NCBI RefSeq assembly: GCF_023055435.1
Contig: NW_025963890.1
Coordinates: 21,328,001-21,392,000 of the forward strand
From: Haliotis rufescens
Lineage: Eukaryota
DNA: 64,000 nt
Direction of reading: 5' to 3'
The translations under genes were made by a program, and so were the position numbers. Positions within the stretch are counted from its first letter, which is position 1. Each line of letters starts with the position of its first letter. Shown in pieces: positions 1-29,811 of this stretch. The notes beneath the pieces are model-generated. The model saw nothing but the letters and a program-made list of their open reading frames with translations. It was not told the DNA's origin and ran no database searches.

Positions 1-404
1 AAAAATGTCCCCATTGAAACATATCTTAGTACTCAGGAAAAAAGATCATTGCCTGAGAATGTATTGTTTTTAAGGTCTTAGCCAAATGGATAAGTGCCCT
101 TAATGTACAAGAACTGTGTATGAAGTAATACTCAGCCTATATATAAACAAAACAAACATGTGTCATAATCTCATTTGTACAGAACAGAAAACCTCATTTG
201 ATGCTCCAACAAAGGCCTTCATAAATACCATACTTCCTCTACTAATTAGTGCCCGGTTATTTCTTAACTTGTTTACTTTTAGACATGGCTCATATATCAG
301 AGGCTGGCTTTACTAGAGACCCAGGCCTTACTCATTCCTTTTGTGTCTGTGCCCTAGGAGAAATCACTAGCTGTAGCTGACCCGGCCCTTAATAAAATAC
401 ATAC

Positions 405-464
405 CTTGGAGGCAAATCCACTCATTGAGCTGCCGACGTCATTCATCAAGGAGCCGTCCTTCAC
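405..464 (-). CDS. ARFGAP1: ARFGAP1 internal coding exon (60 nt, phase 0/0), VKDGSLMNDVGSSMSGFASK, ALPS2 N-terminal half, copy B
   Basis: Minus strand reads ttctctcacAG|GTGAAG...TCCAAG|GTatgt with canonical splice sites. The peptide resembles the recalled vertebrate ARFGAP1 segment VKEGKIFDDVSSGVSQLASK and follows the 15081-15170 exon in frame. Confidence 0.85.
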
Positions 465-1666
465 CTGTGAGAGAACAAACAGTAAAATTAGCATTATCAT
501 TCACAGTTGATCATACTACAGTCAGAACAGAGCTTTGAGATGTTTGAGGATGTACACTATATACTCATAATCATTTAATCTATCAGGGGTCAAACTTAGA
601 CTTACTACATTCAGGAGGTTATTTGTGTAACTACCGTATTATATGTATTTTTTGCCCGTCTGTCCACAGAACTGAACTGTTAGTGACATGGAGTTAATTG
701 TGAATTAAAAGTGGTTAATCATGCCACTTCACTTAAATACAACAGTCAAGCCAATCGTGATGTGAGTTTCAAACATTGAACACTTTGGTGATGTCCAAAA
801 CAAACAAAACAGTGATATTTTAAATATAAAAAAGAGGCACTCATCCACTCCGAAGTGAACTAGACAGTATTGACACTATCCTTGGGTGAGTGGGTATTCA
901 ATATTTGGAAAGTCTGTCTGTATGTTATCATTATTCAAGTGAGTGCTGTCACAGTCCTTGACATAAGCCAAGGGTCATAATCAGGGTAATCAGGGTCCAA
1001 ACCCACAACCATTGTATCCATCCTTTCAGCTATGGGATGCAACTCCTTGTTAATCTTAACAGGTTTGTATACACTGAATGACCAGGGTATTTTATTAACA
1101 GGTTAATATTAGAACCCTCCATCAGATACAGCAGCTTTGTAGTGTTGTTACTACTCGTAACCAACAAACCAAGCCTCAGCCAGGTCTCTAGTACTGCGTC
1201 ACGACTGTGCAAATTATATATAGATATTTGTTTTACTAAAAGCTAGGCAAGTCTAGCTTCCTTGACATCACTGCAGACGAGGAAAGGTTCTTTTGAAGAA
1301 AAAAATTACAATTATTTTACTGAAATGCTAATTGTTAGTCTACCTGGTTTCAGCAAGAGGGAAACCAGCGAGAGCTTTGACCAATGAGTGTTCAGATTAC
1401 ATCACAAAAAAGTTTGTGGTCATCCACTCTACACACTGCTTCAATATCAGGCAACTGAAGAGTTAGACAAAATTCATGTGTGAAGCAGGACTCATTTGAC
1501 TCCCACGAGACGAATTTCATTACTTGACTCAAAGTAGACACGCATCACTATTACACCACATACTGACCATATGTATTCATGGGAGATGGAGGAACGTATA
1601 CAAAACATTATTTATGAAGGACTGATGGATGCAACTCTGCACAGCCAGCTGTGGTACTAAGATCAG

Positions 1667-2068
1667 ACCGCCTCCGTGGTCTAGTCATAGAGCATCCGCC
1701 CAGAGAGCGTACAGTCTGGGGTTGATCCCAGGCCGTGTCACACCAAAAGATGTTAAAAGATGGTACTTGTTGTTTCCCTGTGTGCGCTTAGCATTAAGGG
1801 GCTCATAGTCAGTATACTGTGTCTGAGTGGGGTATTCATGTCAAACTGCGTCATGGTATCTTAGTGGGCTAGCACTATAAATCGGCATNNNNNNNNNNNN
1901 NNNNNNNNNNNNNNNNNNNNNNNNNNNNNNNNNNNNNNNNNNNNNNNNNNNNNNNNNNNNNNNNNNNNNNNNNNNNNNNNNNNNNNNNNNNNNNNNNNNN
2001 NNNNNNNNNNNNNNNNNNNNNNNNNNNAAGTACACTAATCTTGACCTTAAACCCAATTTCACCTCACC
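1667..2068 (+). mobile_element. tRNA-headed SINE family A (Meta/MESC-like core)
   Basis: tRNA-like head ACCGCCTCCGTGGTCTAGTCATAGAGC...GGGTTGATCCC, core GTCACACCAAAAGATGTTAAAAGATGGTAC and tail CACCTCACC; TACTAAGAT flanks it (1655-1663, 2069-2077); homologous to 54664-55016. Confidence 0.85.
1889..2027. other. Assembly gap (139 N)
   Basis: Run of N inside the SINE, where other family A copies have a (CA/TG)-rich microsatellite. Confidence 0.99.
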
Positions 2069-2890
2069 TACTAAGATAACTTGGCCAGCCGCACAACCAG
2101 CATGTGCATGAGTAATGGGCGGTCTTGCAACTCTCACATGGATAAAAGAAACTAATATTTTGTCTGCTACGTCTCACCAGAGTTTCCAAGGCAAGAACAA
2201 ATTGGAAAATAACATGCTATGGAAATGCTCTGGGGATGTTAAATATGCAGACTGGTATATATACATTACATACGGTAAATCATAGAGATGACAAAAAATG
2301 AAGGACCTATAGATCGTAAGAAGGAAGAGTTGTCAGGTGTTATTAATGAGATTATCAAGCCTGCAGACGTTAAATATGATATGGAAACACTGACATAACA
2401 CAGCAACCAGGGGTGTAAGATAACAAGGACACCGAACATATCACTCTGTACATGGATTGCTGCATCTCAGCATGGAGATGCAACTATGTACCAGCTGCCA
2501 ACTCCTTAACAGTCAGTGTTTTCAGATCCTTTTTATCCCAAGTTGTTGAGATATGTTAAGATGTGTTGATTATACATTATTTACAAAACTGTATAACAAA
2601 GCTAAATCAATTGGTATCTGAGGATTGGGATTTGAAATGGAATGCATTCATTATTTAACAAAGTGAGTGACGGAGTGACTTCGGGCACATGCTGCTGCTC
2701 TTGAAAGTGTTTTTATCATATCACAGCAGTCAGTTGTTTTGTCATGTTGGAGGCATTACTATGTCAAAGTAACACAAGTCACAGACAATTACACAGGTGC
2801 CTGTGGAGATTCCAAGATAGGAAAGGTCACAATTTTTGTACCAGGTGCTTATGATTTAAAGAGCCAACTAATGATTATCAAGAAGTTACA

Positions 2891-3430
2891 ATGTGTGAGC
2901 TGGTTGATTGTGTGTCATCATGGTCAGATGATGTGGATTGTTGTTCATGCAATCAACCACTGGTTTGCCTGACCAAGAACTGATTATCTACGATCCTCCA
3001 TGTGTGACCTGGCTGATTGTGTGTCATCATGGTCAGATGGTGTGGATTGTTGTTCATGCAATCAACCACTGGTTTGCCTGACCAAGAACTGATTATCTAC
3101 GATCCTCCATGTGTGACCTGGCTGATTGTGTGTCATCATGGTCAGATGATGTGGATTGTTGTTCATGCAATCAACCACTGGTTTGCCTGACCAAGAACTG
3201 ATTATCTACGATCCTCCATGTGTGACCTGGCTGATTGTGTGTCATCATGGTCAGATGGTGTGGATTGTTGTTCATGCAATCAACCACTGGTTTGCCTGAC
3301 CAAGAACTGATTATCTAAGATCTTCCATGTGTCACCTGGCTGATTGTGTGTCATCATGGTCAGATGGTGTGGATTGCTGTTCATGCTATCAACCACTGGT
3401 TTGCCATGATACAGCTTGATTATTACTGAC
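2891..3430 (+). repeat. Tandem array, 109-bp unit, about 4.8 copies, derived from the SINE family D body
   Basis: (A/T)ATCAACCACTGG recurs at 2951, 3060, 3169, 3278 and 3387; the unit aligns to the middle of the element at 3723-3975. Confidence 0.92.
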
Positions 3431-3722
3431 GGCAGTCTAAATTGACCATCATCACAACTCCCAAGAGAGCTATCATAATCAGGGTTCACCTATAATTTGT
3501 CACATACAGTCAGTGCAGGGCCAGTCTCGATGACTGGTCCACCTGTACTTTCTGTTGTTGCTAAATCTTGGTTACAGTGCCACATCACAAAGAGTATTCT
3601 GAAAACTCATTCCCGTTTGGCACATAGGGGCTGGAAACATACCCAGCACCCATGTTTGTTGGTTAAATTTAACTGACTAAAACAAATATCAGAATGTTAC
3701 AATGTGTCTCCTGATTGTGTGT

Positions 3723-3975
3723 GACCCATGAAGATTCCGAATAGGTCTTCAGTAACCCATGCTTGCCGTAAAAGGTGACTATGCTTGTCGTAAACGGCGA
3801 CTAAAATAGGATTGGGTGGTCACGGTCAGGCTCGCTGACTTGGTTGATGCATGTCTGATTGATCCCAAGTGCGTGGATCGATGCTCATGATATTAATCAC
3901 TGGATTGTCTGGTCCAGAATTGATTATTTACAGACCGCCGTCATATAGCTGGAATATTGCTGATTGTGTGTAAAT
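3723..3975 (+). mobile_element. SINE-like family D (no tRNA head)
   Basis: GACCCATGAAG...GCTTGTCGTAAACGGCGACTAA...CTGGAATATTGCTG; homologous to 16339-16594. Confidence 0.8.
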
Positions 3976-4593
3976 GCTGCTCATGCTATCAACCACTGAT
4001 TTGTCTTGTCCAGATTTAACGACATATATCTGCCATAATACAACTATTGGAGTGACAATCACCACCTACTCAGTGTATAATAACAAGTTTGTGACATGAC
4101 GAAAGCATTGCCTCGTCATGCTGAACACCTTGTTTTCCATCCCCATATGGGAATGATGTAGATCTCCCATTTCGATGTACCCCATAGTGATATTGCTTTA
4201 TCATTTGAAAAGAGGCAAAAAACATCTTCTTAAATTTTGATTTAATCTACAAAAGTCTTATTCAGAACAGACAGACATTTCTCTTGGTAACATTATTTGT
4301 AGGTCACCTCTATTGTAGGACAACAGTGAATATATTATACAAAAATAACTGATTATGATACCAACAGAACTGATGATATTATAAATGATGTCTGTGACTC
4401 CTAAAATTGGTATTGTTGAATCATAAGACTTAAACCTAGTATAGAAAGAGAGAGATAGATAAAGCATCCAAATATATCCTTAACCTTTAGTTGTACATAA
4501 TATGCTTCCAAAACAGATCGATCATTACAGATAGATGAAGCAAACAACTGTAAATATCAGTTTCAAAATGGCACTGCTGTGATGTTAGTTGTG

Positions 4594-4938
4594 AGGTGAA
4601 GCGTGTGTGTGTGTGTGCTGATGCTGGTATTATAGTGCTAGCCCACTGAGATACCATGACACCGGATATAACTGGAATACTGTTAAAAGCGGCATTAAAC
4701 CCAACTAACTGACTGACTGACTGACTCACTCACTGAGATACCATGCAACACTGAATACCCACTTAGGCACAGTATACTGACTCAGAGCTGACCCGTCCTT
4801 GTTTTAGCCCCTTATTTATATGGTGCCAGGAGGTACCATTTTTATGTCTTTTTATAAGACATAGCCAGGGATCGAACCCTTAGACCTTCAATTTTCCAGG
4901 CTGACACTCTATGTAACCACTAGACCACTGAGGCAGTA
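4594..4938 (-). mobile_element. SINE family A copy with a nested 72-bp 3'-tail insertion (4659-4730, plus strand)
   Basis: Homologous to 54664-55016. The nested piece CTGGAATACTGTTAAAAGCGGCATTAAAC-(ACTG/ACTC)n is flanked by a 15-bp TSD CACTGAGATACCATG (4644-4658, 4731-4745). Confidence 0.8.
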
Positions 4939-5226
4939 GATATGATGTTAAGTTTTAATACAAATGCATGTGAATGTATAGTCTTTCATATTTCAAGCAT
5001 GACAAACATGTATACATACATCCAGCCACACATATGTTACTGGCAATTTCATTAAAATCAGATTTGACACTTTGATATGATTTGATTTTTTCGACTTGAT
5101 ACCTGACTCTCCGTCAAGATATGACAACTGCCTGTAGAAGAACATGTCATGTGACCCAATCAAAATGAAGGATGAGCAAATGAGATGTCAGTGATCTCTA
5201 TTCCATATGGTTATATTTGAACAATA

Positions 5227-6489
5227 CAGTGATCACTCGCTACAACGCTACCTTCAAGGTCCAAATAATTAATGAGCGTTATAGATGATCCGCTGAGTCA
5301 AAGGTGGTAGATGACCAACAAAACAGTATACATGCTCTGCCTACCGAACACGATCTACGTTGCACGTTTCAGAGTTTAAAAAAAGATTAGAATAGAAGTT
5401 GTTTATGAATCATTGTGTAAAAAAAAGATTTATCGAGTATTGATATGCTCTTTCAAAAAGACACATCGTTTTCCTTCAGCGAATTACGGTGAATAAACAG
5501 GTATAACAAACTTGGTCAATAAAAATATGAAATTTGATATAAAACATCACTAGACATGATGATTTACAATTTAAATTGTGTTTCCTGCTCTCCAAGGCAT
5601 TGTTTTATATGCAGAGATAAACATTACCGTGTGTATTTTCTCGTAAACTAAGCCGGAAATAGTAATCAGCTGTGCACACGTTTCCTCCCAATATACTGAT
5701 GATTCAGTCTAAAAGTACCCAATGATACAACTCAAAAGAATTTTGATGCAATGGTTGGAAGAAATTGTATCTGAAATTATTATCTTATCAGGAATAATAT
5801 ATTCCAATATCGTGTTATTTTAGTTGCAGCTTTCACTATATATATATTTAAAATTATAAGAACCATAAGGGTAGCACTTTGGTACAGGTGGTATGCAGGA
5901 TATTTTTACGTATTGAACAATTTGACCAGTCACCGTAGGGACTTCCCGCGCTACATGTATTTTGATTGAGAAAACCTTATGTTGACATTTAATAGTTAAA
6001 CTGCCTCAAATATGACTTTTAGCGAGTCATGGTAAGGCATTTATGATATGTGTATCCATTCTCTTGCAACTTAAGTTAATTTCAAGGCATCAATAGCGGT
6101 AATCGGACTGTGGTTGCTGTAAACAACAGTAATTTGTGTGATCTACCGACCACTTCGTATACGATTTTGCAAAAATTACAAAAAAACATTATTTTAATTA
6201 TTGAATGAAATTTTGAATAAAATTAATAAAATATATTGTAAACATTAGTCCAGATAAACAATGAACAAATTTTTTATACCTAGGTATTATAATAATAGGA
6301 TAAAATTGCCTACTTCAGTTTGGATTTGTTGACTGGTATTTCCGGTGTTCACCTAAACGCGGTGATCAGCTGATAATGTTTTTTGAGATGGGAGAAAACA
6401 TTGTGTCGTTGGAACTTGGGGAGCCATGCTTTACCGCACTATAACCGAATTAGCGCTATATTGAAGAGTGCAATAGCGAGGGAACACTA
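5227..6489. mobile_element. Non-autonomous pogo/Tigger-like DNA transposon, copy 1
   Basis: TA|CAGTGATCACTCGCTAC at the left end and ATAGCGAGGGAACACT at the right are imperfect TIRs; about 1 kb is clearly homologous to 61486-63727. Confidence 0.8.
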
Positions 6490-7529
6490 TCTCTGTCACA
6501 CACAAACACAAATTTCCCTTTTAAGTACACCCTTTCGGATTCAGACACAATGGCACTCATACATGACAGAGTGTGTGATTCTCCATTCATTTGTGTTTGA
6601 GATACAGAAATCTGATATGATGCTCCCAATGACCCAGCTACTTATGCCGCAAATTTAAAGAAATTAGTCATGCTAGTGTTACTTACCACCTATCATGAAA
6701 CAACATGTTAAATCTGACTGCATACAACTATAAGAAAAAGTCTCAACTAATACATCCTCTACCTTGAAGTATTGGTTGGGATCACCAAAAACAGGCTTCA
6801 CACTACATGTACCATTATGGGATTCAAACCCAAGTGTTGGGCCTGAGAAGCTATAACCAGTGTGCTACCATGCATATGGCTTCATGACAACATTATTCAG
6901 ATGAAGGTGTACTTGGTCCATTAATACTCTGAAGGTTGCTGTTCTACCACAATTTGCCTCTGAACCATGGCACCATGAGATCTGAACCATGGCAACTGTT
7001 CACTGTCATCACAGAATGTAATCATGTTAGTGCCGTCCATTTCTGCTGTGATATGGATTGCTTGCTAAGGTCTCCCGACAATTCGGATTCACAGGCTATG
7101 CTGTTCTCCTGATAACAGAACCATCATGTGTGTAATCACTTTAGGAGGAGATTGGAATTTGATGATTTAATCCTTGGAAGTAATACGACTTTCAAGATGA
7201 CAGTTTGTGTCCTGAGATGGGTCAATATGACCCTAACCTCAAGTGTGAACAATCTAAGAGCTTGACTCTGCTTGTGTGATTGAGACATTTCAGAGACAAA
7301 TGGCTTTCTTTATGGGGGCTGAACATATCTTAGATTAAGAATTTGAATGCTGAAATAGGATATTGAATTCGTAGCAGACACTTCATGCCAAATTTTTCCA
7401 TAAAGGGAGGAGGACTTTATCAGGATAGGATAACACATTAGAATAATCTGGACAGTCAGGACAATTCTGATCACTTTCCCGCTGGACGCTTCATAAGTGA
7501 GGTGAAATTGGGTTTAACGTCGCATTCCA

Positions 7530-7660
7530 CACCAGAATACAGTGGCCACAACTTTCTTCACTGATCTTGAAGACTTGAATTTCTTTGGTGCCGGAGAAGT
7601 GGAATGGTGCCTACGTTTTGACTTGGGATCAGAGTTGTAGACCCATGTTTCATCACCCAC
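7530..7660 (-). pseudogene. mariner transposase fragment (catalytic-domain start), 3' part of the split element
   Basis: Minus-strand translation GDETWVYNSDPKSKRRHHSTSPAPKKFKSSRSVKKVVATVFW contains the mariner first catalytic Asp motif and the KKFK/KVMATVFW-type motif. Confidence 0.85.
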
Positions 7661-7664
7661 TTAA

Positions 7665-10600
7665 AGCCCCATCTGCGGTAGGAACTACCGCACTCTAGTG
7701 GGCGGAGCTTATACGAGTGATCTGACAGGTCAATATGACGTCATGATAACACACACATTTCATTGGTTATTGCGTAAACGGGTGACGTCATGTAAACACC
7801 CACCCACGTGGGCCGTTTGACAACAAGGACGTAAGTTTTAATGGTAATATAAATATCTACCAAACGATTCCAAGGCTTTTCAACAAACGCGTAGGTCTTT
7901 GGTTTCAAAACCTACCTGCCATGTCGTCTTCACATCTTCATAAAATGATACCGCGGAATGTCCACGATATATCCAACGCAGTCCAATACAGAAATTATAG
8001 ACGTTCTTGTTCTGAGCTATTCTAGATCTCCCGACGACAACGAATTAATACGTTTGTCGTGATGAATATGAACAGTGTAATTGAACACAAAAAAAACATT
8101 ATATGTGTCACGGCAACAATCGTTATCCTGTGGTGTACGGTATATCTGCAGTTTATAAATAGCATTTCTCACATATACACGGTAATCGGTGATTTCAACA
8201 GTGTTTATCTTCGTTCTGTTCGTCTTGCCTTCATCTGGAATCTGGATGACAACGATCGTGTAAAAAACCCTGGTAATGGTCAAAAATATTTTCACGTGAT
8301 CAAAGTAGTTTTTTGTCGTTTCCGTGACATTTTTTCATTGCCCAGTAGCAATGTATTTTGGCAAAGTCACACTTGTCCGATGAAGCTCTTCGTGCCGAAG
8401 TAACTCGATCCGTGAAACTTGGCGGGTCCCAGTGACCCAGATCCCTCTTGATTGGCATGCCAAGTGTCATTTGCATAAGGCCATCCATATTTTTTGTATG
8501 TGTTTCTCCCCTCAAGCCTAAACTAACCAGAGAGCGGCCGGACGAGATAAAATATATATTACTTATCAAAAAATGTCTTTCAATAATTGTGTAAGTTATT
8601 TTATGACATTTAAAAAAAAAGTTTAAACACTTGGTACTAGAATCTAGTCTATGAATTTGTTTATTATGTAGATCGATTCGCTTTGCTTCGGAAGCGAATT
8701 TTTAATAAACAACGGAACAAAGATAAAGTTGATCTGGTTCTATTATAAAGTTGAGCTAGTAGTATTTCTTTTAATAGATCGGTGCGCAATTTTCCACAGC
8801 GGCAGCAAAATTAAGATACGAAAACATTATATTATTTTACGTCGCAATGGAAATAAGAATATTAAAATACGGACAGCCTCACAGACTTCGAAACGATGTT
8901 CAAATAAATATTTGTTCACATTAATTCTGTCATGTGCGAGAAAATGGATTCCAACATTATTTTCATCAAGCTTATTCAGGTCGCTGGCTGCACAGATCAC
9001 CCTCTCTTGTAAACTACTTCGGCATGAACACATGTTTTGTCGCGAAGCTCAAAGCAACAATGTTTCTCTCAGATACATTTTTTTCTCCATCAATGACGAG
9101 CATCTGTCATAATGTGCCTCAACAACCTTCCTGGTCAGTTGAATTCAACAATGTTATACACACGGCCTCATTCACGGCTTCATCACAAGATTCCTTCCAA
9201 ATACCCGCCACGTGATCAGGGTTACGACCTTGGGATGAATTAATAAATTAATTTGCACTTTTAGAAAAAAAAATTTTTCGTGAATATTATTATTCAAAAA
9301 TATCCTTTACATGGTACTTTGGGATTGCACTGCGGATTTCTTTTATTACTTTCTAAAACTTTTTGTTTTCCCCTTTCTGACCTCGCGATCTCCTAGCAAC
9401 CACGCCCCATGAGTGCATCGAGTTGCTGCTTACAACTGACAAGAACTTTGCAATTTCGCTTGTCTTCAATATGAGCAACAAAACATTTTCATGTAAATCC
9501 TAATTTGACGAAGAGGTTTTCGAGATAATCAGGAAGCCTTTGGTCATTTCGATTGTGACATTGGTGACTTTATCGTGGAGAAAGTTCCAATTCAAGATGA
9601 CTTCATTCCGATTCACAACTCGAATCGACAAGATGGCGCCTCTCTTCCCGCCCTTGAAAGTGCAACAGAAACTTTGACAAATTCAGTGCCGATTCTTGGG
9701 AGTAGGGAATCAGTGTCACAGCGAGATTTCATTGTGGAACCAGATGAAGCCGAATATGTATGTTCACACTTCTTTTGTCAACCATGCGTGACACGGCACA
9801 GACAATCGCAGTTAGGGAATGGTGCGGCCACCATGTTGCAGAAATTCGTCGATTCGAACACAGTGTTTCTGGACTGAGTTAAATAAACGAAGTGTTTGGA
9901 GAGATCGTAGATACTTGGACTTGAAGAAACGGAATTATACGTTGCAGCAAATGAAGGATTGGTGTGGACAAAACGGGAAAGGGATCCCAGATTGTACTTT
10001 AAAACTTGTGCGCGAAGTGTATCCAAATACCCCGAACAAAAAATACATGGGACAAGTGTGGATCTAATGATCAAACTCAGTTTTGTGTGTGAAAATTCTG
10101 TGAAAGATAAAGGAAATTCATAATTAAAGTTGTCTTGGAATATGTGTATTGGAGTTTTCGTTTATCGTAAGTACAATATTATCCGGATACGCCTTCTGTA
10201 GGCCAAAACATCAAGTATATTCAGTTACTTATTTACCAGTTGCTTATGTGCATTGTTATGTTGATACACGTAATATATTCATCTATTGTAGTCAAGCTGA
10301 GAAATATTGGCGCAACTTCTGGTGCTTCAAATTAGGCCCCTTCCTAAACACTAGTTGAAAAATCTCTGTAATAATTTACGTTTGATGAATATAAACTGAT
10401 TATTGTGTGGCACAAATCTAACTGTTGAATGCAAATGACCAAAACTAAACAAATATCTGTAATTTTCGAATGGAACTGAAAGAATCGCGTCGTCAATTTC
10501 GTATTTAAGTATCGTTACTGTTACATTAACTGAAACTGATGTTCTGCTGCTGTTCTGCCTTAAAAATATACAACACAATACACTTTGACCACAAATGCAT

Positions 10601-10942
10601 TAAATGTGTCACATGTACACATGACCATGTGCTTTGCTATTTATAGCGCAAACGTAAATAAGCTCCGCCCACTGTGATCGATGCAGACGCCAAACACGAT
10701 CGATTCGATTTTTTAGGATAAAACTACAGAAAATTTATTGACTTATATCTTGATATGGAGCCATTTGTTGTATCCATGGTTTGTCATTCAAGTTGATACG
10801 AAGTTTGACGGTCAATGGTGATCTTGTTCCAGTATGGTTTTCAAAAAACGTCTCCCGACACTCGGTTGTGTTTACATTGTCAGTCATTGTTCGAAACTGA
10901 AACACCGCCACCTTGCGGGCTATTTATAGTCAGGGTGGGGCT
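7665..10942. mobile_element. Kolobok-like DNA transposon (3.28 kb), defective or non-autonomous
   Basis: TTAA duplicated at 7661-7664 and 10943-10946; termini AGCCCCA...TGGGGCT (RR...YY); subterminal inverted repeat AGTGGGCGGAGCTTAT near 7697 and 10658; removing it rejoins the two mariner halves. Confidence 0.8.
9575..10067 (+). pseudogene. Frameshifted KolX-like / P2X7-ballast-like Cys-rich accessory ORF
   Basis: Two overlapping ORFs (9575-9877, 9819-10067) give CSHFFCQPC...FWTELNKRSVW...YL..K...IPDCTLKLVREVYPN...YMG, resembling the recalled P2X7 C-terminal pattern IPSC...IR..FP.....YSGF. Confidence 0.6.
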
Positions 10943-10946
10943 TTAA

Positions 10947-11584
10947 GTAATTTCTTTTTGAATTTGACGAAATCCTCTTCAATTAGCTCTAAATTTCCCC
11001 TGGCAATGACAGTAGTTTTTTCCTTAAGAACAGAATTTAGGAACTTTGGCACCCCACAAGCAGACATCATATTCATCTGTAAATGTTCATGAATAATAGT
11101 TTCAATGGATCCATAGCTAAGACCTGTTTCTTCCTCAAGTTCAGCAATGGTAATATGTCTAGCTAACAGTATAAGTTTTCCTATCTCCTTGATTGAATCT
11201 GCATTGATGGAAGTTGAGGGACATCCAGACCTAGCGTCATCATCAAGGCTTGTTCTCCCAGGCTTAAACATAGCTGTCCAACATTTAACATCAGAATAGC
11301 TAGGGTACTTATCCCCATACACTTGTGACATGCGGTCATGAAATGCTTAGGGAGTACTTTACTCTAAAGTAAAAAAACTTGATCACTGCTCGGTACTCGT
11401 TCTGTTTCATTTCTGTGTCCATTTGGACTCCTATCATGTTCAACTTGCTGTCACTTATACACAAACGGCCTCAACAGACCAAATACACTTGCAATGAACT
11501 ACTCAAACAATGTACTACATTGACTAGTTCACTTTGTTATGGCCCATAGTTGAAAGATAGTCAGGCTTTTTTGGCCAGCCCTCG
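10947..11584 (-). mobile_element. mariner element, 5' part (TIR plus HTH region of a decayed transposase)
   Basis: 5' end TA|CGAGGGCTGGCCAAAAAAG; the ORF reads EYRAVIKFF...GRTSLDDDARSGCP...ITIAELEEETGLSYGSIETIIHEHL...GVPKFL (WVPxxL-like linker). Confidence 0.88.
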
Positions 11585-11714
11585 TATCCATCTGATCCCC
11601 CATTAGTCAGTTCTTCCAACAAGCATGGTATACATAAGAAAGCTCACAACACTTACAACAGGCAAAAAGAAGCAGGGTCAAAGACAAGTGTAGAACATGA
11701 ACATGATGACTTAC

Positions 11715-11774
11715 TTTGTCGGTAAAGTTTACAACAGATGCCGACACATCGTTGAAAATCTTGCCCTCTGCCAC
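11715..11774 (-). CDS. ARFGAP1: ARFGAP1 internal coding exon (60 nt, phase 0/0), VAEGKIFNDVSASVVNFTDK, ALPS2 N-terminal half, copy A
   Basis: ttttcacccaatcAG|GTGGCA...GACAAA|GTaagt; same length and phase as 405-464 with 8/20 aa identity; EGKIF.DVS matches the recalled vertebrate ARFGAP1. Confidence 0.82.
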
Positions 11775-12165
11775 CTGATTGGGTGAAAACAGACACACAA
11801 ACATCAACATGCAACAAAAGAAATCAAAAGACTACAAACAAAATAAAACAACATGAAAGTTTGATCATCAGCGAAAGTAAAGAAAAAATCTTAGACTTCA
11901 GAGTGATAAAATGTATTTCACTTGAAAATAACTTGAGACATGAAAACATGTTTCAAGAACAAACTGGATAACATATGGTCATTATTTGAATTAGATGTAC
12001 AATTGATGATCAAACTTTTTGAAAAATAATGATCTACATTTCAGTGCTTCAGATTGCCTTGAATACCTATTCATCAATGTCCCAGTATCATTGAAATGAT
12101 GGAAAGAAATATATGTCCAAATTGCTAAGAATGGAGGGTGATTTCTTGTTTGACGGGTCACTCAC

Positions 12166-12183
12166 CCACACCTTCCTGGCAAT
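12166..12183 (-). CDS. ARFGAP1: Candidate 18-nt frame-preserving ARFGAP1 microexon (IARKVW)
   Basis: acagTGCttcAG|ATTGCCAGGAAGGTGTGG|GTGAGT: strong donor, TGC just upstream of the AG, pyrimidine tract further upstream, phase 0/0 between two phase-0 exons. No homology support. Confidence 0.4.
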
Positions 12184-12559
12184 CTGAAGCACTGTATTTT
12201 GATGAAGCTTGAGGAGTATTAAAAAACAAGGTAGGACACTAGCTAAGGTAGTGGTCAAAAGAACATAAAAAACCCATTCATACCGCACCACATTGTATTA
12301 TTTCTTATAGTTTAATCTATATAAGGGATATGTATGTATGTACATTACACAATTCTGTTGTCTAAAAAGCTGTAAGAAATAGAGTTTAAAACATCCAAAT
12401 AAAACTCATAAATCATAAACAATAACCTGCAGATTTCAACTCCAGAATCTTCAATAAAAGGATGGGTCACGTGATATAGCTGGGGCCCAACTTTAATATC
12501 AACACCAACATGTGTATGAATCCATGCTTTCAGACAGATTCACAGGAAGGGCTTGAGTC

Positions 12560-13310
12560 GATGAATGCAGCAGAATTGACAACAAGTACCTGAGTCCATG
12601 GCTGCAGCCAGATTCAGTATAAGGACCTGGGTAAGGATTCTGCAGCAATATGTGGAAAACTGTATCCACGGGTGAACAGTGAACACCAAGCCCATCTGAC
12701 TAATTGTCCTGTTAGCACCTTTGAGTGTGACAGTCGCAGCATCTAACTATTGATTATTGTCAATGCCTGACTGGACAACTAATTCACACTCAGCATGCCA
12801 CAAGTGTTCATCATCATTAGAAACAGCTTCTGCTGAGATAGATTTTCCTTGTGAGTGGGTAATCGTGACTGCCTGGTTGTAAAAGGAATCATGTAAATCA
12901 CTCCACAGATACAACACTGAAATCTTGAAGAAGGCCATGAATACAACAAAACTGAGGGGATGGGTCGACAAAAAGTGCACGGAGGGTCCAATAAGATTCT
13001 GCAGATGGTCACAATATGACACGTCTTGGTGGTCTGGTTAGAGCTGGCAAATCGATGGTTGTAGGAGTGAACCTGATCATTCGGTCAGGAAGACAAACTA
13101 AACAGTACCATCCATACTCACTGAGTACCATTTGTGCTCAATAATCTCAAAGAACATCCGCAAGCAAAACAGCACAAACCGGTGGTCAATATGGTGAGTA
13201 TTGTCCACACATTTGAGGAACTAGGCCACACGGTCGACCAGGTCACTTTCCTGGTGATCACTCAAGAAAGTACTATTCATACTGAGCAGACATTTTGACC
13301 TCCAACTCTT
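12560..13310 (+). mobile_element. Highly decayed non-LTR retrotransposon fragment, R4/Dong-like
   Basis: Broken-frame remnants KYL, RILQ, HHH..ASAE...P....NR.L and WVDKK.HG occur in the order expected downstream of the RT core in R4-type ORFs. Confidence 0.45.
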
Positions 13311-15080
13311 ACTCAGCCATGTTCTGAATGGAGAACAGGTATTAAAGAAACTAGAGAAACAAAGGGAGAAAACTGACCCAAATAGTGACATGAGTAAATT
13401 GCAGATGCTACTCCATTTCATCACAGATCTTATATTGAAAAAACAAAATGAAAAGTTTCACTTTGCAGTCTATTGCATGATTTAGAGATTCCAATCTGCT
13501 AACTGTGGTAGTTGTGCAATATAAATTATTGACATGTCCAATACACAACTGACAGCTGAAACATCAACTAGGTGCAATGTAATATATAGAAATCCCGGGC
13601 AAGCAGCAACATTGAAGCAAAGTTCTTGCAAGGATGACTACCAAAGTCCCAGATTTGACAGCTGCTTTCTTGGCTGGTACCGAAATAGTCCAGCAAGTGA
13701 CAAAAAGGGCTAGGAAGATAACATACAGTGTCTGTCACAAAATATCCCTTGATCATCTTTTGGCGGACACCCTAACCCCATGGAGACCTATATCTATCAT
13801 TGCTCTAGCGCTTACATCCTGAAGGGGAGAAAATCAATACCTTTCTGCTCGCATCATTTCAAGGGCATCAAAGAGGTGGGCTGCTCTGGGCTAGCTTATA
13901 TCTCATGCCACAGAACCTAGGTACCATATGGAATGAAGAACCAACATCAAACAGACACTGTTTGCTGTAAACATATTTCTGATGTCATATGGGCATGGTT
14001 CTCACATCATTATCTTGAAACTCCTGAAAAGTAAGATCTGAGATGAAATGTTTGCAAGGCAAGACATTCCTTTTGCGTGTTAAGCTGTCAATTTGCTGAT
14101 AAATGGCATAATCAGTAAGTAATACATCTCTTTCTGCTTGCCTGGCTAGTCGGTTATCATCAAGCTATAGCATCATTGCAGCATACAGTCAGGAAAAAAC
14201 ATAAAAGAATTTGGTGCAATGGGAAAGCAGATGAGTATGTTTCTATCATGCCCACTACAAACAGTCCAGCCATTCTACACACAACAGCCATGCAACATCA
14301 AACGACAACATCAGGTATAACATGCTCTACATTGTCACAATGACAGGTTCTGAATGGAAACCTGAGGAGCTGCAACATGATTACAGATCATTCTCCATGT
14401 GTCATCTCTTTGCAGTACATAACTTACTGTCAATTCCAATGCTTAAAACAAAGAAAGCAAGTCACTTTCCTGCCATTACTATGTTACATTACAGATTGAG
14501 AATTATATTTTGAATCATGAAGTAAGATATGTTTTTTAGACAAACTGGCAACCAATTCATTGCAAAAGATTTTGAAGACATTCTAATTTATGTATGACCA
14601 CATTATCTACAAGAATGGATGACAATAATCAGCTACTCGCACTGCTCTACAGCCTGAAAGAAAATGCTCAGTTGTCAAAGTATCCACAGTGCTAGTATTA
14701 ACTCTATATGATAAGACATTGTGTTCCAATGAGATATAATGCTGGTACATACACCTTGAAAAAGTTCAGCACCACGACATCTTTATTTGCAAACTTGAAA
14801 CCACAAATATGTCATATGATAAATGACTTCAATTTCTGTATGTCAAAATGAGTATGTGTCTTGTCTGAGAGTTAATACAGGAAAAGATCTAAAAGAAAAT
14901 TCAATACAAATGGAAATATTTAGAAAGTGGTGCTTACTATATAATTCAACATAAAGTCAACAGCCTCATCACCAAATGATTTTGAGCACCAGAGTTTCAT
15001 GCATACTGCAATACAGAGAGACAGGAGATGACAGAGGAGATGGAACTTTGGACTGTTTAGATCCAGAATGAAGGCACTAC

Positions 15081-15170
15081 CTTTTCCTTGGTGGGTTTGA
15101 TGACAGATTCATTAACACTCTGGCCAAGTTCCTTGGTCTTCTTGGCAGTTGTCGTTGCTAGTTTGGCAGC
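15081..15170 (-). CDS. ARFGAP1: ARFGAP1 internal coding exon (90 nt, phase 0/0), AAKLATTTAKKTKELGQSVNESVIKPTKEK
   Basis: ttttgttttcttccAG|GCTGCC...GAAAAG|GTagtg; resembles the recalled vertebrate ATKFGSQASQKASELGHSLNENVLKPAQEK linker between ALPS1 and ALPS2. Confidence 0.9.
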
Positions 15171-16338
15171 CTGGAAGAAAACAAAACTCATGTCATGCAT
15201 GTCTATGTCTGTAGGTAATTGTGTTTATCAACTCTTTTTTCAATTTTTCTGAAAGTAAGATGTACAAATATAAGAAAGGTCCCATTGGTGTGACAAATGT
15301 TATCAATTTTCAAAAATTTACAGGCATATTGCTTTCATTTCTCTCTTCTAACATCTCGTTTGTCAGGTCCTTTTTTCTTTCTATAGCACGGGTAGTCATT
15401 CTAAACATATTTAATGGCCAACTGGGTCACCTGCATTTCTTATTTCAATACAGGGTTTGCCATAGTCACTGTTATAGACCAGTGAAAACTTCAAAGTAAA
15501 ACCAAATACTTTTCTACTCAAACGTTACATGGAATACATAGGATTTATAAAATTTAATATGGCCTTAACTCCAAGACTTAATCTTAAATTTACACCCTCT
15601 TTACTCTGTATTAAGACAGTCATTTTTTAACTCTCAAACAAGAAAGATAAATGTTTGGAGCAGAGGGTGATTTTCGCAAACACATGTTGTCATAGCTATT
15701 TGATAGTGATTCATACACACATGCTCATGATAAAGTTGAAGATGATAAAAGATATGATGATATCTGACACAAACAAACTGGATTGTTTATAATTGTAATC
15801 AGAGATAACTTCAGTAATGCCTACAGAGAATGAAGAATATTCACTATTGAATAAAAGCACCTGCCACAAAGCGGTCAGCGCTGCCCACACAACTAATTGA
15901 TAAACACCTCAGCACTGACCAAACTTGACATTTTGGCCAGTCTCCAGCATATGTCACCCAAGTCTTAATAATGTCTCTCCATAATGGTGACATGCAAAGA
16001 CATCACAAAAGAACTCCTTTTGACATGTTGACGTAAACAATACTGAGACACTTGGAAATTGTAACAATCTGGTTTCTTTCCAGCCATGTTTTTGCCATCT
16101 GTAGTGGTTTGCATAAGCTCCAGATAACGTACAGTGGCCACAATTCAATAGGCATCAATTTGTAAAGGCCATTTAAGTTGGGGCCACTTTGTTATTGTCT
16201 CTTGGGATAACTTATTAATGTCACATTTGTCTGTTGTTTCTGTTGTTGTCAGCACTATTCTAGCCCTAATACATTTGTAGTAACTGAATCTGGGCCGGGA
16301 AAACAAGAATGAGCAATGTCTAAAGCTGTTGGGGTATG

Positions 16339-16594
16339 TTTGTTAGTTAGTTTGTTTGTTTGTTGTTTAACACTGCACACAGCAATATTCCAGATATATG
16401 ACGGTGGCCTGTAAATAATCGAGTCTGGACCAGACAGTCTAGTGATTGACATCATGAGCATCGATCCATGCAATTGGGATATGGTGACATATATCAACCA
16501 AGTCAGCAAGCCTTACCAACCGAACCCGTTAGTCGCCTCTTACTACAAGCATGGATTGCTGAAGCCCTATTCTCTACCTGGATCTCCACAGGTC
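16339..16594 (-). mobile_element. SINE-like family D, full-length copy
   Basis: 13-bp TSD CTGTTGGGGTATG (16326-16338, 16595-16607); 5' end GACCTGTGGAG; (AAAC)n tail. Confidence 0.9.
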
Positions 16595-18199
16595 CTGTTG
16601 GGGTATGATGACATCACCACTGGGACAGTGTTGTAGGCCATATACCTACATACTACCTTAACTCAGTTAAATCATGAAAACAATTTGCAATCTCAAATAA
16701 GGAGGATACAAAAATGGTCATTTCTCTAAAATCAATATTAAATGGTAACCAATGAAAAATTGCAGGAATTTTTTTTTTTCTTGTGTTTTAAAAAAAATCC
16801 CCCTCATAATGCTTGGACAAATATTTCTTCACATTTCTTTACTAAAGCATCTATGAAATGTGAAATTTGGAAGTGTAGTAAGAAAATAGGAACTAACTGG
16901 AATCAAAGCAAGAATTACTTTTGAGAGAATACAATAACATCATATCAGTAAAGTGATCCTAATGGAATACAACCCACTCACTATACACTGAGACATACAT
17001 CAATATTTATGTAGGATGATGAATTATGGCTACACTGACAACCTGATGTTTATAGATCAGTCTAATAATGAACTGGTAAACAGGAGGAGTTTTATGTGTT
17101 AGTCGGCCGCATCTCAATATATCAGGACAACCTGCTCTGAGCAGACCAAACAGCCATCACTGATCCAGGTGCTGTAGGAGGTAGCAGGATTCTTTAACTC
17201 AGTCTGTCACAGCCAAGGTTCCTGGCTGGTCACACCTTCTCACATCAGTAGTAGAAATAAACAAGTATAGGCTCCACAGTCCGGTGCCCATTTCCAGTCG
17301 TGGTCTAGACCTTGTAATTAGTGACTTCTTTCAAACTGAGACATTATCTTGGTGTAATTAGGATAACCATTGCCTGCTTGAATGATACATCATAAATATT
17401 GTGTTTACAGACAAATTGCTTTGCAATGACTTTGAATAACCTTTTCTGGGCCTGCCATTTGGCTCAAACCCAAATTTGCCCTTTATGAGGGTGAGCTCTT
17501 TCAGTCTTACAACCATAGTATTTTAATCTAGGGACTCCCTAACTCTTTAATGTTCAATTATGAGTGTTATTACAAGGACCCACTGACTCTCATCCTTGGT
17601 ATCCAACACTGTAAGTATTACGCAGCAGGAAACTGTACATCATCTGTTTCCATGACAGTTGCATTCTAAGCTAACCATGAAGCCTTGGGTCCTGGTCTTG
17701 GCACTACTGTTACGATAAATCTGTGGTAAAGGACGAGAGTTACAACAGCAGCTAGCCTTGGCTCTATCATGATGTAGCCCTTACAATTCTGCCAATGTTT
17801 CCCCTGGGATATAGACCCTATGTACGATTCTAATAAATCTTTTCTTCTGTAGTTGTTGGATTTTGTATATATACTGAGCAACAAAATAAGGGAAGATTAT
17901 GCAATATAGCTGAAGGCGGCTTTTTGAGTTCAATAACTTAATACGGTTCACAGCAATTAAGACTGAAAGTCACGGGTCATGAGCTAGGTGTCACAAGATC
18001 TAAATATTGTAGCAAATACATCAAAGAGCCCAGTGACACCTCTCGGTCAGTGTCATCATGTTTTACAGTCAACAATTTTCCAGCTGCATCTGTGGCCTGT
18101 ACAAGTGCTTGACAGCATGAGCAACAATCCATGCATATTGACATGATCACATACAATCAGCCAGGTCACACACCATAAGAACCCGGGCGCCATTAGTGG

Positions 18200-18560
18200 C
18201 AGGGCGATACACCAATGTATCGGTGGGTTGCCATTATTTACTTCTTGATACAAGCATCAATTACAGTTGCACACTAAGTAAAATATATTGATTTTTACCT
18301 TCAGCATTTGCTTTAATAACTGTTACACTAAACACTATTTAGAAGAGCAAACGTAACTGTTTTTATCCATTGTGCCATACTTGACACTGCCAACTGTAAA
18401 TCATCAGTGTGCCAGGTATTTGGCCATACTGTCTGTGAAATAAAATGGCTTTGAGAGACAACAGATAAGAGCTCATGCAAGTATCATGATACATATCGGA
18501 TTGTTAGCAAGCTATCATGATGTGTATCAGATCGCACAGTTGGTGTATTGTCTGAGCCCT
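18200..18560. mobile_element. Old hAT-like MITE
   Basis: The ends CAGGGCGATACACCAA and TTGGTGTATTGTCTGAGCCCTA are imperfect inverted repeats with repeated GATAC/GTATC subterminal motifs. Confidence 0.35.
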
Positions 18561-19667
18561 AGTCATCATCCTGTTATGAAGCATGCAAAATACCCCCCCC
18601 ACACACACACACACACACACAAAATATGAAACACTGTGTGAATTATCATATATGGTATAGCTACAGACTGCGACTTTATCCACTACGCCGAAACAAGAGG
18701 CCAGTAAAATTCTGTTTGGTGTATTCAAGCTCAGCTAATAATAGTCGATATAATAACACTAAAATCTACTGAAAATTTTATTGGAACGTTGTTTGGGCTA
18801 CGAGAATCGAAACTCTTTGGCATAGACTGTAGCTGCATAGTAAAAATACCTCCAGATTTCTTCGAGGCACTTTAACATTTTAAATGAAAGGTTTCCGTAA
18901 TATCTGCGCAGTTATACAATGAGAAATCAATAGTAGCAGTCACCAGCAACCCCGATGAGTCACATGAATACCAGACTCAGTTACTGTCAAACAAACATGT
19001 ATACAACTATCACATGGCAGAATCTATCAACATAAACTGTAAGCCATGGGAATCACATAGATCTCACTACGAACAATCAAATCCTTGCATATTGTTTCAC
19101 AGAATAGTAACCGTACATTGTGGATATCCGAACAAGGGATCCGGAAAATTTCTTTTGGCCAACAGGAAATTTGTGTTTTGGTCACCACTTATTTGACAGT
19201 TTCTGGTGGACGTTCATGTATGAATAAAATAATAACAGAATTACATCAAAGGTCACATTCATAACATATACCATATTTTCTTGAGGACAGTGTGCAAAGT
19301 TTTTTTCACCATAAAACACACCGTAATGAGTTTTGACGTGTTTTCACCAACATAATCCAACTATGACATATCATACCGTGTCAGTGCGTAACACCAGAAA
19401 TACCATGTCAACAAATCTGTACTGAATTACACAATTTAATCCTGTTATTACACTAGCTGGTTATAAAAAGTGTTCAGTTTATATATGGACTTATGTTTAT
19501 CATCTATTTGATTAAATTTATTCAAATTTCATTCAATATTGTTTACATTAATTTCAGTGAAATTAGTGTGAAGTGACTCACTATAATTTACAGCAACCAG
19601 GGTCAGATTACCGATTTTGATGCCTTGACTTTTGTTGACAGAGAATGGTTACATAAATATACTACTA

Positions 19668-20154
19668 CAGTCAAGTCCCATTAATCCGACATTGTTGGTT
19701 GCATATGATTATGTCGGATTAACAAGTATGTCGGATAAACGAAATTAAGTAGTATCAACATTTGTGATCGAAAATCGGACAACTACACGATAGATAACTA
19801 TACAAACACGTAATAAAAAAAATATAAATGAAATATTCATATTGTTATGTTACATTGTTAACAGAATATGTTTACTAATCATGCAACTTCTAAAAACAAC
19901 TGTTACGGACTGTATGACTTATTCAAAATACTTTTAAAAGCATAGCATGTGTACTCCCGGGCAAAGTGATCACTGTGTCGGATTAACGAGACTGATCAGT
20001 GATTTCAGTAATTCGTTGCAAATTAGCTGTGTCGGAGTCGGAGTGCGAGACTGTCGGATTAACGGGTCTAAATAGCACTGATTTAATCGGTTCCCATCAT
20101 TAGTGTCCGATAAAGCTGATTGTCAGATTAATGAATGTCGGATTAATGAGACTG
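19668..20154. mobile_element. pogo/Tigger-like MITE
   Basis: TA|CAGTCAAGTCCCATTAATCCGACATT...AATGTCGGATTAATGAGACTG|TA with several internal TGTCGGATTAA repeats. Confidence 0.8.
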
Positions 20155-21109: not shown

Positions 21110-21318
21110 TTCACATCACCAATATGATGATATCCTGGAAATAACCAAATCTCAACCAAACAGGTCAGTGATTGATGTTGTAACATTTCATGCTGGCAGG
21201 GTACGATGACATGCGATAGGCCAAGTCATTAAGCCTGACCACTCAATCCATTTTGTTGCCTCTTATGACAAGTATAGTTTGCTTGGGACCTGTTCTAACC
21301 TGGAATCCCCACGGGGCT
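21110..21318 (-). mobile_element. SINE-like family D, degraded
   Basis: CCAAGTCATTAAGCCTGACCAC...TTGCCTCTTATGACAAG...CCCCACGGGGC aligns to 16339-16594. Confidence 0.65.
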
Positions 21319-21344
21319 CTTACCCTGGTAACTTGTGAAGTACA

Positions 21345-29594: not shown

Positions 29595-29811
29595 GTGAGG
29601 TGAAATGGGGTTTAACGTTGTGTCCAAGTTTATTGCACTTACATAGCGACCTGCATGCATCCTTGTTCTAGCCCCTTAATGCCGAGCGCCAGACAGGGTA
29701 ACAACAAGTACCATCTTTTAACGTCTTTTGGTATGACGTGGCCGGGGACTCAAAACCAGACCTTCCTCTCTCTGGGCGGACACTCTACCACCAGACCACG
29801 GAAGCGGTCTA
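29595..29811 (-). mobile_element. SINE family A with internal deletion
   Basis: 14-bp TSD CCAAGCTGGCATAG (29581-29594, 29812-29825). Confidence 0.88.

What the first reader, a model, noticed from the sequence alone, without database searches (positions are those of the whole stretch)
405..11774. Duplicated ALPS2 exon in ARFGAP1: a possible splice-switchable membrane-curvature sensor
Seen: two 60-nt phase-0 exons 11.3 kb apart, both with canonical splice sites and open frames, encode VAEGKIFNDVSASVVNFTDK and VKDGSLMNDVGSSMSGFASK (8/20 identical, hydrophobic positions 6/7/10/14/17 kept) despite heavy nucleotide divergence. Known: this segment begins ALPS2, an amphipathic lipid-packing sensor whose behaviour depends on bulky hydrophobics and a Ser/Gly/Thr polar face; to my recollection vertebrates have one such exon. 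Inference: an old, selected exon duplication used either mutually exclusively (I/F/V and more charged versus L/M and Ser/Gly-rich) or in tandem, tuning Golgi/COPI curvature sensing by tissue.
Basis: partly seen in the sequence, partly recalled or inferred. Interest (0 to 1): 0.8.

Follow-up and report, generated by a model that had tools for sequence, protein, structure and literature searches.

The report
Duplicated ALPS2 cassette exon, abalone ARFGAP1
The abalone gene for the Golgi regulator ARFGAP1 has two old sister exons in its membrane-sensing tail: one is always used and the other is optional, and public gene models already list both.

Summary
Two 60-nt, phase-0, minus-strand exons lie at 11774-11715 (A) and 464-405 (B). 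Both have AG/GT splice sites. Their peptides are 8/20 identical, far above chance.

They are coding exons 9 and 10 of a roughly 106-kb, 12-coding-exon ARFGAP1 gene in a Haliotis genome (H. rufescens or H. cracherodii).

The N gap (1889-2027) lies inside the A-B intron and touches no frame.

The pair is not mutually exclusive. B is constitutive and A is a cassette.
- RefSeq isoforms X1/X2 of this species carry A+B; X3 carries B only.
- RNA contigs show the junctions exon 8>A and A>B in two runs, and exon 8>B in a third.
- No A-only form was seen in abalone.

The same A+B / B-only pattern occurs in gastropods, bivalves, a chiton, cephalopods, an annelid, two nemerteans and a brachiopod. Deuterostome, arthropod and cnidarian proteins examined have one unit. 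The duplication is therefore probably a single one, older than these spiralian phyla.

Helical-phase arithmetic suggests A is a separate amphipathic segment, about 190 degrees out of phase with B. It has more charge and less Ser/Gly/Thr than B. An effect on curvature sensing is inferred, not shown.

I found no paper on this pair. Mammalian brain ArfGAP1 is already known to alter ALPS2 by splicing.

The parts
15081..15170 (-). ARFGAP1 coding exon 8 (90 nt, phase 0-0). It encodes AAKLATTTAKKTKELGQSVNESVIKPTKEK, the linker between ALPS1 and the A/B units. Its donor at 15081 splices either to exon A or to exon B.
   Evidence: Sequence and splice sites. tblastn of P0264 residues 257-288. Joint 15079>11772 in runs X2 and X3, and a loose end at 15079 running into the start of exon B in X22.
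11775..15080 (-). Intron between exon 8 and exon A (3,306 nt, GT..AG on the minus strand).
   Evidence: table 5: the joint skips 3306 letters with ends CT..AC on the + strand.
11715..11774 (-). Exon A (coding exon 9, 60 nt, phase 0-0), an optional cassette that is a paralogue of exon B. It encodes VAEGKIFNDVSASVVNFTDK.
   Evidence: Present in RefSeq isoforms X1/X2 (P0264, P0263) and absent from X3 (P0265). Included in RNA contigs of X2 and X3 and skipped in X22.
465..11714 (-). Intron between exon A and exon B (about 11,250 nt). It holds the assembly gap and repeat-like open frames.
   Evidence: The A>B junction is shown by loose ends at 11713 in X2 and X3 that equal window 433-462.
1889..2027 (.). 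Assembly gap (139 N) inside the A-B intron. It affects no exon and no frame.
   Evidence: It lies 1,425 nt from exon B and 9,688 nt from exon A.
405..464 (-). Exon B (coding exon 10, 60 nt, phase 0-0), constitutive. It encodes VKDGSLMNDVGSSMSGFASK, the first part of ALPS2 proper.
   Evidence: Present in all 7 Haliotis isoforms. It is the best conserved unit, with mean B-B identity 0.69 over 153 taxon pairs.
15171..64000 (-). Part of the roughly 59-kb intron between coding exon 7 (window-equivalent 74364-74296, outside the window in L013) and exon 8.
   Evidence: tblastn of P0264 and P0163. The loose end at 15172 in X2, X3 and X22 leaves the stretch upstream.
1..404 (-). Start of the roughly 10.6-kb intron between exon B and coding exon 11 (window-equivalent -10227 to -10352/-10367, in L011).
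   Evidence: tblastn of P0264 residues 327-373 on L011.

Best explanation
Exons A and B are products of one ancient tandem duplication of the 60-nt exon that encodes the first 20 residues of the second lipid-packing sensor (ALPS2) of ARFGAP1.

In abalone the downstream copy B is constitutive. The upstream copy A is a cassette exon. Both are 60 nt and phase 0, so skipping or including A keeps the frame. The result is a B-only protein (518 aa, isoform X3) or an A+B protein (538/533 aa, isoforms X1/X2). These points are shown.

The rest is inferred. B runs on in roughly the same helical phase into the next exon (LTAASTKGWRDLQSLW) and with it forms the ALPS2 amphipathic helix. A is about 190 degrees out of phase with B, and the hydrophobic moment collapses at the DKVKDG joint. 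A therefore cannot simply lengthen that helix.

A most likely folds on membranes as a separate amphipathic segment of about 16 residues between the linker and ALPS2. That would make a third membrane-binding element, with I/F/V-type hydrophobics, more charge and fewer Ser/Gly/Thr. It would be expected to raise membrane avidity or relax the curvature dependence of ARFGAP1, and so the timing of Arf1-GTP hydrolysis on COPI membranes.
For: Gene and model:
- ArfGap (PF01412) exons lie on the same strand 16-25 kb beyond the window end.
- P0264 maps in 12 pieces on the minus strand, from window-equivalent 93578 to -12388.
- The contig length of the RefSeq proteins, 79,745,701, equals that of the window's contig.

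Usage:
- Of 7 Haliotis isoforms, 4 are A+B, 3 are B-only and 0 are A-only.
- RNA contigs show the joint exon 8>A in X2 and X3. The loose end at the A donor equals window 433-462 in X2 and X3. The loose end at the exon 8 donor equals the same letters in X22.

Age:
- 37 of 276 held proteins of 200 aa or more have two units. All 37 with a name are lophotrochozoan, or are unnamed relatives of such proteins.
- Long and short isoform pairs occur in Gigantopelta, Babylonia, Littorina, Saccostrea (two species), Mytilus, Liolophura, Octopus, Tubulanus, Lineus and Lingula.
- For 17 of 18 A units the best match in another taxon is an A. For 18 of 18 B units it is a B.
- No third copy exists in the window or in four flanking loci; the best score there is 26.

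Biophysics:
- The moment direction is 95-120 degrees across A, 290-310 degrees across B and 300-360 degrees in the next exon.
- muH falls to 0.06 at the A/B joint.
- A has 5 charged and 4 S/T/G residues. B has 4 charged and 8 S/T/G.
Against: - No experiment or tissue information bears on function. The sample labels were coded, and contigs cannot give inclusion levels.
- A fits the ALPS composition rule poorly, with 5/20 charged and 4/20 S/T/G residues. It may not bind membranes as an ALPS at all.
- AlphaFold2 gave no helix and pLDDT below 50 across residues 288-327. That fits a disordered region but does not support the two-helix picture.
- The helical-phase argument assumes ideal 100-degree helices.
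- Many molluscs are represented only by B-only models: pectinids, Pinctada, Aplysia, Lymnaea and several heterodont bivalves. A is therefore lost, or not annotated, in part of the clade.
Confidence: 0.85

Rival explanations
1. A and B are mutually exclusive exons, as in classical tandem duplicated exon substitution. Each transcript would carry one or the other, giving two alternative ALPS2 starts.
For: The exons have equal length and phase and are homologous, which is the usual anatomy of such pairs (abstracts of PMC9741552 and PMC9013439). One unnamed transcript-derived protein, P0194 (479 aa, annelid-like), carries only an A-type unit directly before the ...KGW exon.
Against: - Transcripts with both exons exist. 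One 1,168-nt contig in X2 joins exon 8, A and B, and X3 shows the same junctions.
- 37 public proteins carry A+B.
- No A-only form occurs among the 7 Haliotis isoforms or in any named mollusc, nemertean or brachiopod protein seen.
Confidence: 0.04
2. Exon A is splicing noise or a decaying pseudo-exon that annotation pipelines pick up. Only B matters.
For: A is less conserved than B, with mean pairwise identity 0.46 against 0.69. It is absent from the models of many molluscs.
Against: - A keeps an open 60-nt frame and consensus splice sites.
- A units of 18 taxa in four phyla keep V1, a hydrophobic residue at positions 6, 7, 10, 14 and 17, Ser/Thr at 11 and 13, and K/R at 20.
- A is as conserved as the constitutive flanking segments (0.46 against 0.48 and 0.47).
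- The contig that includes it has depth 10.7 in X2. The contig that skips it has depth 6.95 in X22, a different run, so the two figures cannot be compared.
Confidence: 0.05
3. The two-unit state arose several times independently, or was homogenised, in molluscs, annelids, nemerteans and brachiopods, rather than once in their common ancestor.
For: This region does duplicate repeatedly. Exaiptasia isoform X1 has a tandem repeat of the neighbouring 19-residue segment. Units are only 20 residues long, so trees are weak.
Against: - A units match A units of other phyla better than their own B, and the reverse holds for B (17/18 and 18/18).
- Within-species A-B identity (0.40) equals between-species A-B identity (0.40), so there is no sign of recent duplication or conversion.
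- Type-specific characters are shared across phyla: B has K2, G4, S/T5 and N8, while A mostly has K5, acidic 8 and S11.
Confidence: 0.06

Closest known systems
ALPS2 motif of mammalian ArfGAP1 (residues 264-295; ALPS1 is 199-234). These are the coordinates given in passages of PMC13139335, which cites Bigay et al. 2005 and Mesmin et al. 2007.
   Same: The position in the protein is the same: after the GAP domain, ALPS1 and a linker, and just before the conserved ...S.KGW... segment. Exon B plus the start of the next exon gives a 32-residue amphipathic stretch with 12 S/T/G residues, 7 bulky hydrophobic residues and muH 0.35.
   Different: The mammalian motif is described as a single one. Here an optional paralogous 20-residue unit can be placed in front of it. 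I did not compare with any mammalian sequence directly.
[quoted passage not shown] This is a passage of PMC4944158 citing Levi et al. 2008, J Biol Chem 283:8564. I did not see that paper; Parnis et al. 2006 is not held.
   Same: Alternative splicing changes the ALPS2 region of ArfGAP1, so a splice-switchable ALPS2 is already a known idea.
   Different: The mechanism and lineage differ. Here a duplicated homologous exon is included or skipped, in spiralian invertebrates. Tissue specificity is unknown.
Tandem exon duplications with alternative splicing. Sources seen: PMC9741552 (listing and start of abstract), PMC9013439 (abstract), and oyster alternative oxidase, PMC5589949 (listing only).
   Same: Adjacent homologous exons of equal length and phase, ancient, alternatively spliced.
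   Different: Most described cases are mutually exclusive substitutions. This pair is additive: one copy or both.

Membership tests
ARFGAP1 (gene identity) | N-terminal ArfGap zinc-finger domain (Pfam PF01412) | tested here: met
   two exon matches over the curated cut-off on the same strand of the same contig (54.3 and 38.4 bits), 16-25 kb past the window end. PF01412 is precomputed for P0163 and its relatives.
ARFGAP1 (gene identity) | Closest named relatives are ARFGAP1, and the locus encodes such a protein end to end | tested here: met
   P0264 (RefSeq 'ADP-ribosylation factor GTPase-activating protein 1-like isoform X1', Haliotis) maps in 12 pieces with 87-100% identity per piece. The mismatches are at piece ends that read into introns.
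ALPS motif (applied to exon B plus the next exon) | Amphipathic helix of 20-40 residues with bulky hydrophobic residues every 3-4 positions and a polar face rich in Ser/Thr/Gly with few charges. This definition follows passages of PMC4569407 and PMC13139335. | tested here: met
   32 residues, muH 0.35, 12 S/T/G, 7 F/I/L/M/W/Y, and a near-constant moment direction (290-360 degrees). It has 7 charged residues, which is not few.
ALPS motif (applied to exon A) | The same composition rule | tested here: inconclusive
   residues 5-20 are amphipathic (muH 0.52), but exon A has only 4/20 S/T/G residues and 5/20 charged. Its hydrophobic residues are I, F, F plus four V.
ALPS motif | Unstructured in solution, and folds into a helix on highly curved or loosely packed membranes | not testable with these tools
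   AlphaFold2 gives pLDDT below 50 and no helix for residues 288-327. This is compatible with disorder and nothing more.
Tandem exon duplication | Adjacent exons of equal length and phase, with sequence similarity above chance | tested here: met
   60 nt each, phase 0-0, consecutive in the gene. Score 44 against a next best of 26 among 39,479 candidates.
Mutually exclusive exon pair | One and only one of the two exons in each transcript | tested here: not met
   The A>B junction is seen in X2 and X3. A+B proteins P0264 and P0263. Lineus X3 lacks both units.
Cassette exon (exon A) | Both the inclusion junctions and the skipping junction are seen in RNA | tested here: met
   Inclusion: 15081>11774 and 11715>464 in X2 and X3. 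Skipping: 15081>464 in X22. The runs are labelled 'RNA?' by the tool, but spliced contigs show that they hold RNA.

The most novel reading that the evidence does not exclude
The A/B pair is a splice switch older than the split of molluscs, annelids, nemerteans and brachiopods. It toggles ARFGAP1 between a two-sensor form (ALPS1 + ALPS2) and a three-element form (ALPS1 + A + ALPS2). This would set how strongly, and on what curvature or lipid packing, Arf1-GTP hydrolysis is triggered on COPI membranes. It would be an invertebrate counterpart, reached by exon duplication, of the mammalian brain isoform that alters ALPS2.
Probability: 0.4. Interest if true: 0.5.

Novelty: new member of a known kind. 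Interest (0 to 1): 0.3.

Why it matters
ArfGAP1 is the textbook curvature sensor, and its ALPS motifs have been studied almost only in mammals and yeast. This finding offers a natural variant: an extra amphipathic unit, conserved across four phyla, that is more charged and poorer in Ser/Gly/Thr, and that is spliced in or out in front of ALPS2. That gives a ready-made comparison for asking how the number and chemistry of such helices set membrane avidity and curvature dependence.

For genome annotation it matters little. Both exons and both isoform classes are already in RefSeq models for this species and for many relatives.

Tried and rejected
- Mutually exclusive splicing: rejected.
- Chance similarity: rejected.
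- A third unit copy in the window or in flanks L009, L011, L013 and L015: none found, best score 26 or less.
- The gap disturbing the model: rejected, because the gap is intronic.
It has AG/GT sites. No joint there appeared in 4 runs, and none of the proteins then held contains its peptide. It is unsupported, but contigs cannot prove absence.
- AlphaFold2 of the long isoform with a 31-row alignment: mean pLDDT 54.8, and the A/B region is below 50 with no helix. Uninformative for the helix-break question. I ran no fold search.
- Tissue specificity: not obtainable. Sample and organism names were coded.
- Literature. 'ARFGAP1' + 'exon duplication' gave 0 papers. 'ArfGAP1' + 'ALPS2' gave 14 papers, 10 listed. 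Two further ArfGAP1 searches and one on splice isoforms showed nothing on invertebrate exon duplication in the listed titles and abstract starts. Supplements were closed and subscription papers are not searched, so 'not in print' holds only for these searches.
- The figure that ALPS2 strengthens ALPS1 binding about 40-fold (Mesmin et al. 2007) is recalled, was not seen, and is not used as evidence.


Full report
**Observation.** The two proposed exons are in the window as described, on the minus strand.
- Exon A is 11774-11715. It is preceded by AG, followed by gtaagt, and encodes VAEGKIFNDVSASVVNFTDK.
- Exon B is 464-405. It is preceded by AG, followed by gtatgt, and encodes VKDGSLMNDVGSSMSGFASK.
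- The peptides share 8/20 residues, with a BLOSUM62 score of 44.
- The DNA shares 27/60 bases, and only 5/20 third codon positions match.
- Against all 39,479 open 20-codon stretches of the window in six frames, the next best score to A is 26 and to B is 23.
- Among the 132 open 60-nt stretches flanked by AG and GT, the next best scores are 9 and 6.

The similarity is therefore real homology at the protein level with saturated silent sites. That is what an old, selected duplication looks like.

**Gene.**
- A six-frame Pfam search of the window's own assembly places the window at G000:C112:21328001-21392000. It finds ArfGap-domain exons on the minus strand of the same contig, 16-25 kb beyond the window's end.
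- I fetched the flanks and searched one ArfGap exon against the protein representatives.
- I then used the best full-length hit, P0009 from Pinctada, to collect named relatives.
- The Haliotis asinina protein P0163 matches the locus far better than any other.
- Its cluster holds RefSeq isoforms named for Haliotis rufescens and H. cracherodii. The two species have identical sequences. The contig length on record, 79,745,701, equals that of the window's contig.
- Isoform X1 (P0264, 538 aa) maps to the locus in 12 pieces on the minus strand, from window-equivalent 93578 to -12388, about 106 kb.
- In the window lie coding exon 8 (15170-15081, AAKLATTTAKKTKELGQSVNESVIKPTKEK), exon A and exon B. The rest of the window is intron, including part of a roughly 59-kb intron upstream of exon 8.
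Full-length comparisons used database proteins.

**The gap.** The 139 N at 1889-2027 lie in the intron between A and B. They affect only the stated intron length. Order and frame are shown independently by RNA contigs and by the RefSeq proteins (see below). I neither filled the gap nor looked it up.

**How the exons are used.**
- Of the 7 Haliotis isoforms in the cluster, 4 carry A directly followed by B: X1 and X2 of both species groups.
- The other 3 carry B only.
- None carries A only.
- The other difference between isoforms is a 5-residue stretch (YGSNA) at the end of exon 11.

I laid the contigs of four public runs on window:11400-15400.
- Runs X2 and X3 hold a joint that skips 3,306 letters with GT..AG ends on the minus strand. 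This is exon 8>exon A.
- In both runs the contig continues past the exon A donor into 28-30 letters that occur once in the window, at 433-462. That is the start of exon B.
- In X2, exon 8, A and B lie on one 1,168-nt contig.
- In run X22 the contig leaves the exon 8 donor directly into the same exon B letters, so A is skipped.
- No loose end at the A donor led anywhere else.
- The tool labels these runs 'RNA?' as a guess. The spliced contigs show that RNA is in them.
- Contigs cannot give inclusion levels, and the sample names were coded. I cannot say anything about tissues.

A is therefore a cassette exon, B is constitutive, and the pair is not mutually exclusive in abalone.

**Distribution and age.**
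- The same long (A+B) and short (B-only) isoform pairs are in public models for Gigantopelta, Babylonia, Littorina, two Saccostrea species, several Mytilus, the chiton Liolophura and Octopus.
- They are also in models for the nemerteans Tubulanus and Lineus and the brachiopod Lingula.
- A+B forms alone were seen for Nucella, Pomacea, Argonauta and the annelid Owenia.
- Some A+B proteins come from transcript-sized Logan contigs. An example is P0153, 544 aa on a 3,043-nt contig.
- A unit profile built from the stored proteins finds two units in 37 of 276 held proteins of 200 aa or more. It finds one unit in 172 and none above threshold in the rest.
- All 37 are from these spiralian groups or are unnamed relatives of them.
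- Echinoderm, hemichordate, amphioxus, chelicerate and cnidarian isoform sets that I opened have one unit. Their roughly 20-residue isoform differences lie elsewhere or remove the single unit.

Using one long isoform from each of 18 taxa:
- For 17 of 18 A units the best match in another taxon is an A unit. For 18 of 18 B units it is a B unit.
- A-B identity is 0.40 both within and between taxa.
- Mean pairwise identity is 0.69 for B and 0.46 for A. It is 0.48 and 0.47 for the constitutive flanks.

This supports one duplication before these phyla split, with B under the stronger constraint and A about as constrained as its neighbours.

Against a simple picture:
- Many molluscs are represented by B-only models only: pectinids, Pinctada, Aplysia, Lymnaea and several heterodont bivalves.
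- Lineus X3 lacks both units.
- One unnamed annelid-like transcript protein, P0194, has an A-type unit only.

**Likely mechanism (inferred).** I used the Fauchere-Pliska scale and 100 degrees per residue on P0264.
- The hydrophobic moment points to 95-120 degrees through A, 290-310 degrees through B and 300-360 degrees through the following LTAASTKGWRDLQSLW.
- It falls to 0.06 at the DKVKDG joint between A and B.
- B and the next exon can therefore form one amphipathic helix: 32 residues, muH 0.35, 12 S/T/G. This corresponds to ALPS2, which in mammals is residues 264-295 (passages of PMC13139335).
- A is about 190 degrees out of phase, as expected for a 20-residue insertion. It would have to act as a separate short amphipathic segment (residues 5-20, muH 0.52).
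- A has 5 charged and only 4 S/T/G residues, against 4 and 8 in B. It fits the ALPS composition rule less well.
- My reading is that including A adds a third, chemically different membrane-binding element. This would raise avidity or soften curvature dependence. Nothing here tests that.
- AlphaFold2 predicts the region as disordered (pLDDT below 50). That is compatible with the reading but uninformative.

**What is known.**
- Both exons and both isoform classes are in RefSeq models of this species. As annotation, the finding is not new.
- That splicing can alter ALPS2 is also known. A passage of PMC4944158 states that brain-specific mammalian ArfGAP1 arises by a deletion/insertion that alters ALPS2, citing Levi et al. 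2008, which I could not read.
- Tandem exon duplication with alternative splicing is a well-described kind (abstract of PMC9013439; listing of PMC9741552).
- I found no paper on a duplicated ALPS2 exon in invertebrates. Searches cover this, and one search returned 0 papers. Supplements and subscription journals were not searchable.
- The scan's notes hold nothing on ARFGAP1. A follow-up on another gene of this genome reports a similar spiralian-wide duplicated exon pair.

**Verdict.**
It is wrong about mutual exclusivity and untested about function.
- This is a new, undescribed-in-print member of a known kind that is already present in public gene models. Interest is modest.

Noticed in passing
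No joint appeared there in four runs, and none of the proteins then held contains the peptide. It remains unsupported.
   Followed up: partly
L013:5650-5810 (minus strand; window-equivalent about 79650-79810, outside the window): The intron after ARFGAP1 exon 3 holds about 2.5 tandem copies of a roughly 71-nt unit. The unit repeats the 3' end of exon 3 together with its donor site (..MSISEKYNTKAAALFRDK|gta..). One copy has an in-frame stop. This is a degenerate local duplication of an exon end.
   Followed up: partly
proteins P0342 and P0007 (Exaiptasia diaphana ARFGAP1 X1 and X2): The sea anemone long isoform has a tandem repeat of the neighbouring 19-residue linker segment (..KLGTTLNENVVKPTADK then ..KLGSTINESVVKPTTNK), which the short isoform lacks. 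It looks like an independent duplication of the exon just upstream of the ALPS2 unit.
   Followed up: no
proteins P0329 (Limulus X3), P0308 (Lineus X3), P0194 (unnamed): The unit exon can itself be skipped. Limulus X3 has no unit and Lineus X3 lacks both A and B. An unnamed annelid-like transcript protein has an A-type unit only.
   Followed up: partly
L011, window-equivalent about -10352 to -10367: Haliotis isoforms X1/X3 differ from X2 (and from X4 in H. asinina) by five residues (YGSNA) at the end of coding exon 11. This looks like an alternative donor site.
   Followed up: no
window 10933-11346 (minus strand): A 138-codon open frame lies in the A-B intron just downstream of exon A. By eye it looks like a fragment of a transposase N-terminus. 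This is a recalled resemblance and was not tested.
   Followed up: no
window 61920-63160 (both strands): Long open frames of 413 and 351 codons on opposite strands lie within what looks like a tandem repeat of about 250 nt, inside the 59-kb ARFGAP1 intron.
   Followed up: no
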